Assembly (NCBI RefSeq): GCF_011386835.1
Contig: NC_088812.1
Span: 3,286,001-3,350,000, forward strand
Length of the DNA stretch: 64,000 nt
Direction of reading: 5' to 3'
Origin: Chrysemys picta bellii
Lineage: Eukaryota
Shown here: positions 42,101 through 51,100 of the stretch, piece after piece
How positions within the stretch are numbered: position 1 is the stretch's first letter
Layout: every line of letters begins with the position of its first letter
Notes under the pieces: generated by a model
Told to the model about the DNA's origin: nothing
The model's input: only the letters and a program-made list of their open reading frames with translations
Database searches by the model: none
Position numbers and translations under genes: made by a program

Positions 42101-45100
42101 AGGGGGCTGGGCGCCAGGACTCCTGGGTTCTATCCCCAGCTCAGGGAGAGGAGTGGGGGCTAGTGGTGAGAGCAGGGGGGTTGGGAGCCAGGACTCCTGG
42201 GTTCTATCCCGGCTCGGGGAGGGGAGTGGGGGCTAGTGGTGAGAGCAGGGGGGTTGGGAGCCAGGACTCCTGGGTTCTATCCCAGCTCGGGGAGGGGAGT
42301 GGGGGCTAGTGGTGAGAGCAGGGGGGTTGGGAGCCAGGACTCCTGGGTTCTATCCCAGCTCGGGGAGGGGAGTGGGGGCTAGTGGTGAGAGCAGGGGGGT
42401 TGGGAGCCAGGACTCCTGGGTTCTATCCCGGCTCAGGGAGGGGAGTGGGGGCTAGTGGTTAGAGCAGGGGGGCTGGGAGCCAGGACTCCTGGGTTCTAGC
42501 CCCAGCTCGGGGAGGGGAGTGGGGGCTAGTGGTTAGCACAGGGGGGTTGGGAGCCAGGACTCCTGGGTTCTATCCCGGCTCGGGGAGGGGAGTGGGGGCT
42601 AGTGATTAGCGCAGGAGGGTTGGGAGCCAGGACTCCTGGGTTCTAGCCCCAGCTCGGGGAGGGGAGTGGGGGCTAGTGGTGAGAGCAGGGGGGTTGGGAG
42701 CCAGGACTCCTGGGTTCTAGCCCCAGCTCGGGGAGGGGAGTGGGGGCTAGTGGTGAGAGCAGGGGGGTTGGGAGCCAGGACTCCTGGGTTCTAGCCCCAG
42801 CTCGGGGAGGGGAGTGGGGGCTAGTGGTGAGAGCAGGGGGGTTGGGAGCCAGGACTCCTGGGTTCTATCCCCAGCTCGGGGAGAGGAGTGGGGGCTAGTG
42901 GTTAGAGCAGGGGGGCTGGGAGCCAGGACTCCTGGGTTCTAGCCCCAGCTCGGGGAGGGGAGTGGGGGCTAGTGGTTAGCACAGGGGGGTTGGGAGCCAG
43001 GACTCCTGGGTTCTATCCCGGCTCGGGGAGGGGAGTGGGGGCTAGTGATTAGCGCAGGAGGGTTGGGAGCCAGGACTCCTGGGTTCTAGCCCCAGCTCAG
43101 GGAGAGGAGTGGGGGCTAGTGGTGAGAGCAGGGGGGTTGGGAGCCAGGACTCCTGGGTTCTAGCCCCAGCTCGGGGAGGGGAGTGGGGGCTAGTGGTTAG
43201 AGCAGGGGGGTTGGGAGCCAGGACTCCTGGGTTCTATCCCCAGCTCGGGGAGAGGAGTGGGGGCTAGTGGTGAGAGCAGGGGGGTTGGGAGCCAGGACTC
43301 CTGGGTTCTATCCCAGCTCGGGGAGGGGAGTGGGGGCTAGTGGTGAGAGCAGGGGGGTTGGGAGCCAGGACTCCTGGGTTCTATCCCAGCTCGGGGAGGG
43401 GAGTGGGGGCTAGTGGTGAGAGCAGGGGGGTTGGGAGCCAGGACTCCTGGGTTCTATCCCCAGCTCGGGGAGAGGAGTGGGGGCTAGTGGTGAGAGCAGG
43501 GGGGTTGGGAGCCAGGACTCCTGGGTTCTATCCCGGCTCGGGGAGGGGAGTGGGGGCTAGTGGTGAGAGCAGGGGGGTTGGGAGCCAGGACTCCTGGGTT
43601 CTATCCCGGCTCGGGGAGGGGAGTGGGGGCTAGTGGTTAGAGCAGGGGGGTTGGGAGCCAGGACTCCTGGGTTCTATCCCCAGCTCGGGGAGAGGAGTGG
43701 GGGCTAGTGGTTAGAGCAGGGGGGTTGGGAGCCAGGACTCCTGGGTTCTAGCCCCAGCTCAGGGAGAGGAGTGGGGGCTAGTGGTGAGAGCAGGGGGGTT
43801 GGGAGCCAGGACTCCTGGGTTCTAGCCCCAGCTTGGGGAGGGGAGTGGGGGCTAGTGGTGAGAGCAGGGGGGTTGGGAGCCAGGACTCCTGAGTTCTATC
43901 CCGGCTCGGGGAGGGGAGTGGGGGCTAGTGGTTAGCACTCTCTGACTCTCCTGTTTCTTTTCCAGGGAACTGAGCAGTTTCATCCAGTCCAGTCACTGCA
44001 CAGCAGGTGCTGCCCACGTACACTTAGAGGGAGGGGTGGCGCTGGGCATCGGCGCCTTTAATCTGGTGAGTTACTACTGAAGGGGGTGGGGAACGGGGCA
44101 TGGGGCCTTTCCCCTCTAGGGGGCGCTGGCTCGTCCCTGGCCCCGGGGCGGGGGACTGGCTGACGGGAACGGGACACGGGGCCTTTCCCCTCTAGGGGGC
44201 GCCGGCTCGTCCCTGGCCCCGGGGCGGGGGACTGGCTGACGGGAACGGGACACGGGGCCTTTCCCCTCTAGGGGGCGCCGGCTCCTCCCTGGCCCCGGGG
44301 CGGGGGACTGGCTGACGGGAACGGGACACGGGGCCTTTCCCCTCTAGGGGGCGCCGGCTCCTCCCTGGCCCCGGGGCGGGGGACTGGCTGACGGGAACGG
44401 GACACGGGGCCTTTCCCCTCTAGGGGGCGCCGGCTCCTCCCTGGCCCCGGGGCGGGGGACTGGCTGACGGGAACTGGACACGGGGCCTTTCCCCTCTAGG
44501 GGGCGCCGGCTCCTCCCTGGCCCCGGGGTGGGGGATTGGCTGACGGGAACGGGACACGGGGTCTTTCCCTTCTAGGGGGCGCCGGCTCCGATCTGCCCCA
44601 AGGGTGGGGGACTGGCTGACGGGACACGGGGCCTTTCCTCTCTAGGGGGCGCCGGCTCCGATCTGCCCCGAGGGTGGGGGACTGGCTGACGGGAACGGGA
44701 CACGGGGCCTTTCCCCCCTAGGGGGCGCCGGCGCCGGCTCCGATCTGCCCCGAGGGTGGGGGACTGGCTAACGGGACACGGGGCCTTTCCCCTCTAGGAG
44801 GCGCCGGCTCCGATCTGCCCCGAGGGTGGGGACTGGCTGACGGGAACGGGACACAGGGCTTTTCATTCCTCTCTTCCCTCCCCAGACGCTCTCTCTCTTC
44901 CCTCCGCGGATCCTGAAGCTGCTGGAATTCGCTGGGTTTTCGGGGGACAAGGTAACCCCCTGCCTGGGGTTCCCGTCATCCCTTGCAAGGAGGGGCTGCC
45001 CCGCTCAGTCTGCAGGTCCCCACGATGGGGGTTCCCCTGGTCACTGCTGAGAAGGGGGGCTCTGTGGGGGTTCCTGCCAGGGGAGAGGGTCTGGGGGGCT

Positions 45101-48100: not shown

Positions 48101-51100
48101 AGGGGCACCGGCAGGGGTGGGGGGAGAGCAGGGGGCTGCGGGTCGGGAGTGAGGGGCACTGGCAGGGGTGGGGGGAGAGCAGGGGGCTGCGGGTCGGGAG
48201 TGAGGGGCACCGGCAGGGCTGTGTGTGTCCCAACCCCCAGTCACTTGCCCAATAACACTGACCCCAAATGGGAAGCTGCATGTCCCCCTTTCTGCTCCTC
48301 AACCTAACATACTGCACTGGTCATTCCCTTTCTACCTGCCTGCTCGGCTCTCTCCCACATCCAGCCCTGGCGATTGGCTGGCTCAGGGCCCCCAAATCTT
48401 ACCACTTCCTCTCCCCTCCTATCCCAGCTGCAAAGTGTGTAGGGGAGTGGCAGGGGCTACCTACAGAGACAAGACGGACGTGGGCGTAGGACAGGACTCC
48501 TGGGTTCTCTCCCCAGCTCTGGGAGGGGAGTGGGGTCTAGTGGTTAGAGTGGAGGGCTGGCAGCCAGGACTCCTGGGTTCTCTCCCCACTCTGGGAGGGG
48601 GGGGTCTAGTGGTTAGGGGGGGCTAGGAGCCAGGACTCCTGGGTTCTCTCCCCGCTCTGGGAGGGTTCATGTTCTGTGGAGGTAAATTTTGCAGTCTCAG
48701 CTGGAAATGTGGTGCTGGCTTCCGGCAGATCTAAACACTGGGGTCGTGTTAAATTAAATTAGATCATTCACAGCATGAGAGCTGGATCTGCCCGGGTCAT
48801 CTGTGTCAATACCAGCTGGACCTGGTTTTTACTCTCATCATAGTTTGAGCTGCCGCACATTTGTATTGCCAATACCTATGTGCAGGCATTAGGTTCCAGA
48901 GTTAACAGGCTGGGAGCTGAACCAGGCACTCTCCAAGCCATCGTTTCAGGCTGCCTGCAGACTCAGGCACGTGTTGCTGGGCTGTTTTTTGGCAAACGGG
49001 TCGGCTAGAACTTGGGATCTTCGCTTTCGATGCCTGTGGAGATTCTGGAACCCAATCCTGGGTCCAGGGGACCCCCAGTGCGCCCCCCCCGCAGATCGCA
49101 GCCCAGCTGTCTCTCTTCCCCTCAGGCAGGTGTCATCTTTTAAGCAGAAGATCGCGGGCAAGTCTCCCCCCACGGAGAAGTTTGCCATCCGGAAAGCCCG
49201 GCGTTATAAGGGCAGCCGCCCGGTCCCTTTGCCGGTGCCAGCCCTGGTGAGGGGGAAGGGAGTGTGGGGGAGAGGGTTCGAGGGGGGACGTTGTGCTGGA
49301 TGCTGCTTGGAAAAGCCGTGACTCAACTGGTGCCATCACCCGGGATCTGCCGTGCTGGGGAATGGGAGGGGCTGGGAGTCGGGACGCCTGGGTTCTCTCC
49401 CTGGCTCGGAGAGGGGAGTGGGGTCTGGTGGTTAGAGCCAGGGGGCTGGGAGTCAGGAATGCTGGGTCCCATTTCCCGTCTTTGCCACGTGAACTTGGAT
49501 GGGTCGTGCCCCTCTCTGTGCCTCAGTTTCTCCCACTTCCCATTGGCTCTGAGTGCAAGCGGCTAGAACCTGCTCAGGGCGAGGGGGGCTGGGGGCACTG
49601 GGAGGGAATCGAGGACAGGTTAGGTACTGTCCAGCGGGGGATGTGGGGGCTGTCCTGCGGGTCCAGATCCTCCTCTGCGGGGTGAGCAGCCTGACCCCCC
49701 CGTCCCTCCCCAGGAGATGATGTACATGTGGAACGGCTTCACCGTGCTGGGCAAGCAGCGGGAGCTGCTGGAGGGGACGCTGGAGACACTGACGCAGGCC
49801 GAGAAGAAGCTGCAGGAGTCGCCAGGTAACAGGATGTGAGGCCTGTCCCCGCTAGGGGGCGCCAGCTCCCATCCGGCCCCAGGGTGGGGACTGGCTGGCT
49901 TGGGGCGGGAATGGGGCACGGGGCCTGTCCCCGCTAGGGGGCGCCAGCTCCCATCCGGCCCCAGGGTGGGGCACTGGCTGGCTGGGGGTGGGAATGGGGC
50001 ACGGGGCCTGTCCCCTCTAGGGGGCGCCAGCTCCCATCCGGCCCCAGGGTGGGGACTGGCTGGCAGGGGGTGGGAATGGGACACGGGGCCTGTCCCCGCT
50101 AGGGGGCGCCAGCTCCCATCCGGCCCCAGGGTGGGGCAGTGGCTGGCAGGGGGTGGGAATGGGACACGGGGCCTGTCCCCGCTAGGGGGCGCCAGCTCCC
50201 ATCCGGCCCTAGGGTGGGGCACTGGCTGGCAGGGGGTGGGAATGGGACACGGGGCCTGTCCCCGCTAGGGGGCGCCAGCTCCCATCTGGCAGGAGGGTGG
50301 GGACTGGCTGGCCCGGGGGGCGGGAATGGGGCATGGGGCCTGTCCCGTCTAGGGGGCGCCAGCTCCCATCCGGCCCCAGGGTGGGAACGAAGAACACGCA
50401 TGTGGCTGCATCGTGTTTGCTGGGTCTCAGCCCCAGTGGAGGGACTGGGCCCCCCATCTCTGCCCAGAGCCAGTGGGAGGTAGAAGGCACAGCTGGGGGG
50501 CTGTGGGGGGGTTGTAGGGCCGTGGGGGGGGGTGACACACCGGGGTGAGGGGGTGATGGGGTGGGCTGTGAGGGGGTGACACACTGGGGTGGGGGGGGGC
50601 TGTGTGGTGGTTGGAGGGCTGTGGGGGGGTGACACACTGGGGTGGGATGGCTGTGGGGGGGTTGGAGGGCTGTGGGGGGGGTGACACACTGGGGTGGGGG
50701 GGCTGTGTGGTGGCTGGAGGGCTGTGGGGGGGGGTGACACACCGGGGTGGGATGGCTGTGGGGGGGCTGGAGGGCTGTGGGGGGGGTGACACACCGGGGT
50801 GGGAGGGCTGTGGGGGGGCTGGAGGGCTGTGGGGGGGGTGACACACTGGGGTGGGGGGGGCTGGAGGGCTGTGGGGGGGTGACATACCGGGGTGGGATGG
50901 CTGTGGGGGGGCTGGAGGGCTGTGGGGGGGGGGGTGACACACCGGGGTGGGATGGCTGTGGGGGGGCTGGAGGGCTGTGGGGGGGGTGACACACTGGGGT
51001 GGGGGGGCTGGAGGGCTGTGGGGGGGTGACACACCGGGGTCGGAGGGCTGTGGGGGGGGTTGGAGGGCTGTGGGGGGGGTGACACACTGGGGGGGGGGCT

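What the first reader, a model, noticed from the sequence alone, without database searches (positions are those of the whole stretch)
44085..50388. Three minisatellite arrays carrying 27 CTCF-like motifs in forward / reverse / forward orientation inside one gene
Seen in sequence: introns 7, 11 and 15 of the TTC39A-like gene are tandem arrays of one repeat family (76-bp x10 on +, ~85-bp x10 on -, ~83-bp x7 on +). The best-conserved part of every unit is CC(T/G/A)CTAGGGGGCGCC, while the flanks diverge between arrays. Established: this fits the CTCF core consensus (CCASYAGRKGGCRS), and cohesin loops form preferentially between convergent CTCF sites. Inference: arrays 1 and 2 form a convergent pair about 2 kb apart, and arrays 2 and 3 form a divergent, boundary-like pair. 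The locus could therefore be a copy-number-variable 'super-anchor' or insulator built by minisatellite expansion, plausibly a general feature of GC-rich turtle microchromosomes. Each motif contains a CpG, so binding could be methylation-switchable.
Basis: partly seen in the sequence, partly recalled or inferred. Interest (0 to 1): 0.78.

Follow-up and report, generated by a model that had tools for sequence, protein, structure and literature searches.

The report
Old intron repeats with CTCF-like motifs
Three introns of a painted-turtle TTC39A-like gene are filled with tandem copies of one ~80-base repeat carrying a CTCF-like motif; the repeat sits in the same introns in all turtles checked, but its copy number swings from 1 to 39 and the motif is kept no better than its surroundings, so it looks like an ordinary unstable minisatellite, not a purpose-built chromatin anchor.

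Summary
The three arrays are real: 44086-44864 (+, 10 units), 46326-47184 (-, 10 units) and 49825-50385 (+, 7 units). They lie in introns 7, 11 and 15 of the Chrysemys picta bellii TTC39A-like gene. A fourth, solo copy lies in intron 9.

- **Motif quality:** only 1 unit matches the strict CTCF consensus; most have T or G where A is preferred. By a CTCF weight matrix (recalled from memory), 20 of 27 units score at p<=1e-5.
- **Age:** orthologous loci of seven other turtles carry the same family in the same four introns, in the same +,+,-,+ orientation. The layout therefore predates crown turtles. The alligator ortholog lacks it.
- **Copy number:** 1 to 39 per site.
- **No sign of selection on the motif:**
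  - Core columns change as often as the rest of the unit (0.080 vs 0.086, p=0.77).
  - Units are no better conserved than control introns.
  - The motif is destroyed in several lineages.
  - Most units of Chelydra's 39-copy array are motif-dead.
  - Copy number does not track motif integrity.

Best reading: an ancient local intron repeat that grew into neutral minisatellites. CTCF binding is possible but untested and not selected for.

The scan has noted many CTCF-motif minisatellites elsewhere in this genome.

The parts
44086..44864 (+). Array 1: 10 units of about 76 bp plus a 26-bp partial unit. It fills 93% of intron 7 (44066-44885). 8 units score >=13.14 bits for CTCF in the forward direction.
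   Evidence: TRF; nhmmer; PWM; exon map
45632..45681 (+). Solo partial unit in intron 9 (45577-45768). Its motif reads CCCCCAGGGGGCGCC and scores 15.3 bits. Other turtles have 0-6 copies at this site.
   Evidence: nhmmer; PWM
46326..47184 (-). Array 2: 10 units of 84-88 bp with a 261-bp higher-order period. It fills 91% of intron 11 (46266-47202). 6 units score >=13.14 bits on the reverse strand.
   Evidence: TRF; nhmmer; PWM
49825..50385 (+). Array 3: 7 units of about 83 bp starting at the splice donor of intron 15 (49826 to about 51663). 6 units score >=13.14 bits. 5 of 7 read CCGCTAG, which places a CpG at core position 2.
   Evidence: TRF; nhmmer; PWM; CpG table
43966..44065 (+). Exon 7 of the TTC39A-like gene (Iml2/TPR_39 profile positions 157-179), directly upstream of array 1.
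   Evidence: sequence; Pfam; tblastn
44886..44951 (+). Exon 8 (profile positions 180-201), directly downstream of array 1.
   Evidence: Pfam; tblastn
46206..46265 (+). Exon 11 (profile positions 263-282), upstream of array 2.
   Evidence: Pfam; tblastn
49714..49825 (+). Exon 15 (profile positions 411-443), upstream of array 3.
   Evidence: Pfam; tblastn

Best explanation
**Origin.** A short local repeat of about 80-85 bp sat once (about 1.3 copies) in each of introns 7, 9, 11 and 15 of the TTC39A-like gene. It was already in +,+,-,+ orientation in the common ancestor of living turtles.

**Growth (inferred).** The unit is GC-rich and G-quadruplex-prone, and in the single-copy state it is flanked by a partial copy of itself. 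It has therefore repeatedly expanded and contracted by replication slippage or unequal exchange. This gave lineage-specific minisatellites, 10/1/10/7 copies in the painted turtle.

**The motif.** The founder carried a CTCF-like motif, and every copy inherits it by descent. The motif drifts at the same rate as the rest of the unit and of neighbouring introns. The arrays are therefore best read as (near-)neutral intron filler.

**Binding (inferred).** CTCF may well sit on some units in Chrysemys, because its motifs are strong. If so, that is a by-product and not a maintained super-anchor.
For: - **Same layout in all turtles:** the family occupies the same four introns in the same orientation in Platysternon, Chelonoidis, Pangshura, Eretmochelys, Dermochelys, Chelydra and Emydura. 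Emydura's intron-15 copy appears with a consensus profile at E=1.4e-4.
- **Orthologous sites:** 25 of 29 array consensi are closest to the same site in another species, and none is closest to another site in its own species. The sites have evolved apart, without homogenisation between them.
- **Labile copy number:** 1-13, 0-6, 1-10 and 1-39 per site.
- **How arrays start:** single-copy introns of 131-141 bp consist of the donor, one unit, a partial unit and the polypyrimidine tract.
- **No constraint on the motif:** the core non-majority rate is 0.080 against 0.086 for the rest (p=0.77).
- **No constraint on the unit:** unit identity to Chrysemys is 0.77-0.98. Control introns 8, 10 and 12 give 0.81-0.94 for cryptodires and 0.70-0.84 for Emydura.
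- **Motif often lost:** only 83 of 161 units and 17 of 29 array consensi keep a strong motif. In Chelydra's 39-copy array, 24 units score below 13.14 bits, and 23 of them carry a 1-bp deletion in the G run.
- **Copy number is independent of motif integrity:** Spearman rho 0.12, p=0.55.
- **Instability-prone sequence:** about one G4-type pattern per unit on the G-rich strand.
- **Gene size:** tandem repeats make up 37% of the 17-kb gene, while the alligator ortholog is 6.4 kb and has no such unit.
Against: - The motif scores are high, about 17 bits, against an expectation of 0.016 hits per kb by chance.
- Within Chrysemys, the motif CpG survives in 26 of 28 units, while six other CpG positions have decayed to TG or CA in whole arrays.
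- The intron-11 motif is strong in 7 of 8 species and scores 12.8 bits in the eighth. Its core changes about half as often as the rest of that unit: 4/112 against 43/552, which is not significant.
- Unrelated repeat families with CTCF-like cores occur in the same window and, per earlier scan notes, across the genome. That hints at a non-random link between CTCF-type motifs and minisatellites.
- No occupancy, methylation or contact data could be examined.
Confidence: 0.7

Rival explanations
1. The arrays are real multi-CTCF platforms. Many CTCF molecules bind the co-oriented units and stop cohesin. Arrays 1 and 2 face each other, and arrays 2 and 3 point apart like a boundary. Copy number tunes insulation, or alternatively Pol II pausing and splicing of the host gene.
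For: - 20 of 27 units score at p<=1e-5, and about 17 bits is typical of the units.
- This is far above composition-matched shuffles.
- The 76-86 bp spacing leaves room for one CTCF per unit (inference).
- The motif CpG is retained within Chrysemys.
- The intron-11 motif is kept in all eight turtles.
- Known precedents exist: DXZ4, FIRRE local repeats and the CTCF-regulated VNTRs of SLC6A4 (PMC3491370, PMC4820808, PMC2848977).
Against: - The motif is not conserved above its flanks or above unique introns.
- It is dead in many arrays, including the majority of units in the largest one.
- There is no link between copy number and motif integrity.
- Core position 3 is T or G rather than the preferred A in nearly all units.
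- A convergent pair 1.5 kb apart is far below usual loop sizes (my own knowledge).
- Motif-rich satellites can lack CTCF signal, as human alpha-satellite HORs do in bioRxiv 10.64898/2026.07.18.739380.
- Other strong sites blur the clean forward/reverse/forward picture: 45319 (+), 47436 (-) and 51779 (-).
Confidence: 0.15
2. The unit is a fragment of a dispersed transposable element (a SINE- or MITE-like family carrying a CTCF motif). It inserted four times in this gene and was later amplified in tandem, as B2 SINEs spread CTCF sites in rodents.
For: - Four copies in both orientations within 6 kb call for some dispersal mechanism.
- Other interspersed elements with paired CTCF-like motifs exist in the window, at 20920/21003, 22407/22454, 41618/41665 and 47436/47490.
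Against: - The family is found nowhere else in the 64-kb window or in the 3-kb flanks and other introns of seven orthologous loci.
- The 47-bp-period interspersed element is not detectably related to it (E>1).
- No TE hallmarks were seen.
- The genome itself could not be searched, so this remains open.
Confidence: 0.1
3. The units act at the RNA level, as intron-hosted small RNAs or as G-run splicing enhancers in short GC-rich introns.
For: Several introns of one gene host related elements of about 80 nt, which resembles a snoRNA host gene. G runs lie near the splice donors of introns 7 and 15.
Against: - The intron-11 copies are antisense to the gene in all species.
- The units fold no better than shuffles, with z-scores of +0.1 to +0.8.
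- No Rfam match comes near a gathering score.
Confidence: 0.03

Closest known systems
DXZ4/Dxz4 and ICCE macrosatellites (CTCF-bound tandem repeats, superloop anchors of the inactive X)
   Same: Tandem arrays with one CTCF-type motif per unit, all in one orientation. Copy number is variable. For Dxz4, orientation is known to matter (PMC3491370, PMC6125249, bioRxiv 10.1101/165340).
   Different: DXZ4 units are about 3 kb, against about 80 bp here. In DXZ4 the CTCF motif and binding are retained while the rest of the sequence diverges. Here the motif drifts like its flanks. Binding is shown there and untested here.
FIRRE local repeats
   Same: A repeat family that occurs several times within one gene locus, mainly in introns, and not elsewhere (definition in PMC4820808). 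The locus is tied to CTCF (PMC4391730).
   Different: FIRRE is a lncRNA locus with experimental CTCF data. Here the host is a protein-coding gene, the copies have grown into minisatellites, and no occupancy data exist.
Human intronic and promoter VNTRs regulated by CTCF (SLC6A4 Stin2 and 5-HTTLPR)
   Same: Short-unit VNTRs inside or beside a gene for which CTCF regulation has been reported (PMC2848977).
   Different: Those units are 16-23 bp and differ in sequence. The evidence there is experimental.
Ordinary GC-rich minisatellites (VNTRs)
   Same: Units of 76-86 bp, GC content of 70-75%, G4-prone, with higher-order periods. Copy number is labile between species. The arrays grew from the intron's own sequence.
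   Different: The site and orientation have been stable since before crown turtles. Four sister sites lie in one gene. The founder motif is a strong transcription-factor-like match.
Other CTCF-motif minisatellites noted by this scan in the same genome (47-48-bp, 63-72-bp and other units)
   Same: The same species and the same pattern: an old site, lineage-specific expansion and untested binding. This window holds another such array at 6090-8157.
   Different: The unit families differ. The present family is not detectably related to the 47-bp-period element in this window.

Membership tests
Minisatellite / VNTR | Head-to-tail tandem units of about 10-100 bp | tested here: met
   TRF periods of 76, 86 and 83 bp with 85-93% matches. 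Profile hits lie in register.
Minisatellite / VNTR | Variable copy number | tested here: met
   Between species, 1-39 copies per orthologous site.
CTCF binding site | Match to the core consensus CCASYAGRKGGCRS | tested here: not met
   Only 1 of 27 units matches. The rest have T, G or C at position 3, a 13/14 match.
CTCF binding site | High weight-matrix score (MA0139.1-type matrix, recalled from memory) against composition-matched controls | tested here: met
   20 of 27 units score >=13.14 bits (p<=1e-5) and 17 score about 17 bits or more. Shuffles give 0.21 and 0.016 hits per kb at those two thresholds.
CTCF binding site | Occupancy by CTCF in vivo | not testable with these tools
   No turtle ChIP or CUT&RUN data were reachable.
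Functional CTCF-repeat anchors (DXZ4/FIRRE class) | Motif conserved better than the rest of the unit across species | tested here: not met
   Core 0.080 against the rest 0.086 non-majority rate, p=0.77. The seven near-invariant PWM positions give 0.070. 12 of 29 array consensi lack a strong motif.
Functional CTCF-repeat anchors (DXZ4/FIRRE class) | Long-range contacts or insulation at the array | not testable with these tools
   Published turtle Hi-C was analysed at 500-kb resolution and included no CTCF mapping (PMC11529993).
TE-derived CTCF-site family (SINE B2 type) | Many dispersed copies genome-wide | tested here: inconclusive
   No copy lies outside the four introns in 64 kb or in seven 18-25-kb orthologous loci. 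No turtle genome could be searched.
Intron-hosted small RNA | Sense orientation, stable conserved fold or Rfam match | tested here: not met
   The intron-11 copies are antisense. Fold z-scores are +0.1 to +0.8. No Rfam hit comes near a gathering score.

The most novel reading that the evidence does not exclude
In emydid turtles the arrays are true multi-CTCF platforms, part of a genome-wide class of minisatellite-built CTCF clusters on GC-rich microchromosomes. Copy number and motif decay would give each lineage a different insulation strength or a different degree of Pol II pausing and splicing control. Alternatively, CTCF-bound sites may themselves be prone to tandem duplication, which would explain why unrelated minisatellite families in this genome share a CTCF-like core.
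Probability: 0.12. Interest if true: 0.7.

Novelty: new member of a known kind. Interest (0 to 1): 0.3.

Why it matters
**For this locus.** It is a clean, dated example of how short GC-rich introns on reptile microchromosomes swell. A unit of about 85 bp that was single-copy in the turtle ancestor became arrays of up to 39 copies. The gene grew from about 6 kb in alligator to 17 kb in the painted turtle, and the repeats break automatic gene models. It is also a caution: a high-scoring, co-oriented CTCF motif array need not be a maintained regulatory element.

**If the rival were true.** Natural 'mutant' arrays in other turtles (Chelydra, Dermochelys) would allow a ready-made test of how the number and quality of tandem CTCF sites set insulation.

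**The open question worth pursuing is genome-wide.** Why do several unrelated minisatellite families in this genome carry CTCF-type cores?

Tried and rejected
1. **Reads.** The Rfam searches were split around them. Protein look-ups used P0001, which ends before that exon, or other species' protein ids. Local scripts did read the whole window file for exon mapping.
2. **RNA-element idea.** Rejected.
3. **Homology in alligator.** By eye, introns 7, 9 and 15 share short strings with the unit. A profile search with filters off gives only E>0.5, so I do not claim it.
4. **Relation to the 47-bp-period CTCF-like interspersed element.** Not detectable.
5. **Look-ups that failed.** Pelodiscus, Carettochelys and Podarcis orthologs are not on record.
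6. **Earlier scan notes.** A search by sequence came back blank, which means nothing.
7. **Paper searches.** No turtle CTCF maps and no description of this repeat were found.
8. **Spliced model.** Exons were searched one by one by reference. One in-frame read-through of intron 9 (45468-45836, no stop codon) served as the protein query.
9. **Human protein.** P0050 turned out to be human TTC39A. It was printed once and then not looked up or compared.

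
Full report
**1. Observation**

Tandem Repeats Finder reports three arrays:
- 44089-44864: period 76, 10.3 copies, 88% matches.
- 46326-47178: period 86, 9.9 copies, with a 261-bp higher-order period.
- 49840-50385: period 83, 6.6 copies.

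I built a profile from the units and searched the whole 64-kb window.
- It finds 10 units plus a 26-bp stub on the + strand, 10 units on the - strand and 7 on the + strand, each at E 1e-17 to 1e-23.
- It also finds one solo partial copy at about 45632-45681 (+).
- It finds nothing else, even with the filters off.

**2. Gene and introns**

Exon-by-exon translations hit Pfam Iml2/TPR_39 collinearly, at profile positions 157-179, 180-201, 202-262, 263-282 and 411-443.

An in-frame read-through of intron 9, used as a query, led to UniRef 'TTC39A, Chrysemys picta bellii' at 100% identity. The genome is therefore the painted turtle.

Mapping a full-length tortoise ortholog onto the window gives 17 exon hits from residue 9 onward.
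- The arrays lie in introns 7, 11 and 15, and the solo copy in intron 9.
- They fill 93%, 91% and 30% of their introns.
- Intron 15 also holds 52-bp and 38-bp arrays.
- Tandem repeats make up 37% of the 17-kb gene.

**3. Motif quality**

- **Strict consensus:** CCASYAGRKGGCRS is matched by one unit only. The others carry T, G or C at core position 3.
- **Matrix scores:** Its column sums fall smoothly from 913 to 908, as expected, but it should be re-checked. Units score about 17 bits out of a maximum of 26. 20 of 27 reach p<=1e-5 and 25 reach p<=1e-4.
- **Chance:** dinucleotide shuffles of the arrays give 0.21 hits per kb at >=13.14 bits and 0.016 per kb at >=17 bits. A founder unit with such a motif is unlikely by chance, about 1e-3. 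The 27 motifs are copies, not independent events.
- **Other sites blur the pattern:** other strong sites in and near the gene include 45319 (+), 47436 (-) and 51779 (-). The last overlaps the exon-16 splice donor.

**4. Conservation within the window**

- Unit by unit, the 14-column core has the lowest entropy, but the whole 5' half of the unit is almost as conserved.
- Among six subfamily consensi the core is not significantly less variable (p=0.29).
- The motif CpG (GGCGCC) is kept in 26 of 28 units, and no unit shows TG or CA there.
- Six other CpG positions have decayed in whole arrays. CpG observed/expected is 0.63, 0.26 and 0.35 for arrays 1, 2 and 3.

This last point is suggestive. It rests on few independent lineages and does not hold across species (section 5).

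**5. Comparison across turtles, the decisive part**

I fetched orthologous gene loci by protein look-up for Platysternon, Chelonoidis, Pangshura, Eretmochelys, Dermochelys, Chelydra and the pleurodire Emydura.

*Layout.* The unit profile hits the same four introns, in the same +,+,-,+ orientation, in every species. Emydura's intron-15 copy is a single diverged unit found with a consensus profile at E=1.4e-4.

*Copy number.* Copies by intron (assembly-based counts):

| Species | Intron 7 | Intron 9 | Intron 11 | Intron 15 |
|---|---|---|---|---|
| Chrysemys | 10 | 1 | 10 | 7 |
| Platysternon | 1 | 1 | 3 | assembly gap |
| Chelonoidis | 5 | 1 | 8 | 6 |
| Pangshura | 2 | 0 | 9 | 6 |
| Eretmochelys | 2 | 3 | 5 | 8 |
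| Dermochelys | 1 | 3 | 2 | 4 |
| Chelydra | 13 | 6 | 3 | 39 |
| Emydura | 1 | 2 | 1 | 1 |

*Orthology.* 25 of 29 array consensi are nearest to the same site in another species, and none to another site of the same species. The four sites were already distinct in the common ancestor of living turtles. From my own knowledge that is roughly 200 million years ago. They have evolved separately since.

*How arrays grow.* Where intron 7 is single-copy (131-141 bp), it consists of the donor, about 18 nt, one unit, a partial unit and the polypyrimidine tract. The array grew from the intron's own interior, between short direct repeats.

*Outgroup.* The alligator ortholog has the same CALR-RAD23A-TTC39A-GADD45GIP1 neighbourhood.
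- It spans 6.4 kb, and these four introns are roughly 80-190 bp.
- It has no detectable unit.
- It has no PWM hit >=13.14 bits in these introns.

**6. Is the motif under selection?**

- **Core against rest:** across orthologous arrays the core non-majority rate is 0.080 (32/399), against 0.086 (150/1752) for the rest of the unit (p=0.77). The seven near-invariant PWM positions give 0.070.
- **Best-kept site:** only intron 11 shows a trend (0.036 against 0.078, not significant). Its motif is strong in 7 of 8 species.
- **Unit against unique introns:** unit consensi are 0.77-0.98 identical to Chrysemys. Non-repeat introns 8, 10 and 12 give 0.81-0.94 for cryptodires and 0.70-0.84 for Emydura. Persistence therefore reflects slow turtle evolution, not constraint.
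- **Motif loss:** only 83 of 161 units and 17 of 29 array consensi keep a strong motif.
  - It is destroyed in Dermochelys and Platysternon intron 7.
  - It is weakened below the strong threshold (8-11 bits) in Pangshura introns 7 and 15, Dermochelys intron 15 and most intron-9 copies.
  - Its CpG has decayed to TG or CA in several arrays.
- **Largest array:** in Chelydra's 39-copy array, 24 units score below 13.14 bits. 23 of them carry a 1-bp deletion in the G run.
- **Copy number against integrity:** uncorrelated, rho 0.12, p=0.55.

**7. Methylation switch**

A review of the CTCF-DNA structures states two things. Methylation at core position 12 changes binding only marginally. Methylation at position 2 strongly impairs it (PMC6222495).

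The CpG shared by all units is the C12-G13 one; this numbering is my inference. Only array 3 has a CpG at position 2, in 5 of 7 units that read CCGCTAG. The 'methylation-switchable' idea is therefore weak for arrays 1 and 2.

**8. Mechanism and rivals**

Best reading, confidence about 0.7: an ancient local intron repeat that repeatedly expanded and contracted by slippage or unequal exchange.
- This is helped by flanking partial repeats and by one G4-type pattern per unit on the G-rich strand.
- The expansion mechanism itself is inferred.
- The CTCF-like motif is inherited from the founder and drifts neutrally.

CTCF binding in Chrysemys remains plausible because the motifs are strong. However, motif-rich tandem repeats can lack CTCF signal, as shown for human alpha-satellite HORs in bioRxiv 10.64898/2026.07.18.739380.

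Rivals:
- **Functional multi-CTCF platform, 0.15.**
- **TE-derived family, 0.1.** This could not be tested genome-wide.
- **RNA element, 0.03.** Rejected on three grounds: the intron-11 copies are antisense in all species, folds are no better than shuffles (z +0.1 to +0.8), and there is no Rfam match.

**9. What is known**

CTCF-bound tandem repeats are an established kind. Examples are DXZ4/Dxz4, ICCE, FIRRE local repeats, D4Z4, a tRNA VNTR and the SLC6A4 VNTRs.

This scan has already noted at least 18 'CTCF minisatellite' findings in this same genome, and follow-ups reached similar verdicts. Those notes are unchecked by me.

In this window I confirmed a second array with a CTCF-like motif: 6090-8157, 66-bp units, about 22 hits of 13.3 bits. 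I also confirmed a 47-bp-period interspersed element with paired motifs.

The present family is a new member of that kind, with an unusually well-dated history. Nothing marks it as a special 'super-anchor'.

**10. Limits**

I have no read-level data, and those letters were kept out of all later search tools.
- Copy numbers come from single assemblies and may be collapsed.
- The weight matrix was recalled from memory.
- No turtle genome could be searched for further copies.

Noticed in passing
window 6090-8157: A 66-bp x31 minisatellite (336-bp higher-order period) whose units carry a weaker CTCF-like motif, TCTCCTGCAGGGGGAGCCT. It scores 13.3 bits in 22 units on the - strand. CpG observed/expected is only 0.03.
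   Followed up: partly
window 20920-21021, 22407-22472, 41618-41683, 47436-47508 (-): A short interspersed element with two or three CTCF-like motifs (about 12-16 bits) spaced about 47 bp apart. It may be the seed of the 47-48-bp CTCF minisatellites noted elsewhere in this genome. It is not detectably related to the 80-bp family.
   Followed up: partly
window 42091-43935: A 25-copy tandem array of a 74-bp tRNA-like SINE head fills most of intron 6 of the same gene. Smaller arrays of it lie at 41069-41336, 48492-48665 and 26641-26901.
   Followed up: no
window 24580-24598 (-), 13590-13608 (-), 51779-51797 (-): The best single-copy CTCF matches in the window score 23.2, 19.2 and 19.3 bits. The first lies upstream of the RAD23A coding exons, the second in the CALR region, and the third overlaps the splice donor of TTC39A-like exon 16.
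   Followed up: no
window 49826-51663 (intron 15): Behind array 3 the same intron holds two further unrelated minisatellites: 52 bp x15.5 at 50563-1350 of that kilobase range (50563-51350) and 38 bp x7 at 51372-51640. The intron is almost entirely tandem repeats.
   Followed up: no
window 36178-53309 versus L008 10001-16372: The gene spans 17 kb in the painted turtle and 6.4 kb in alligator, with the same neighbours (CALR, RAD23A, GADD45GIP1). 37% of the turtle gene is tandem repeat.
   Followed up: partly
proteins P0001, P0002, P0072, P0074 (UniRef turtle models): Database gene models of this gene in Chrysemys, Terrapene, Gopherus and Chelonoidis are truncated (396-414 aa). At least P0001 and P0002 read into intron 9. 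The GC-rich repeat introns seem to break automatic annotation. P0089 (Platysternon) is named as an NTPase KAP protein although it carries the TTC39 domain.
   Followed up: no
It was kept out of all later searches.
   Followed up: no
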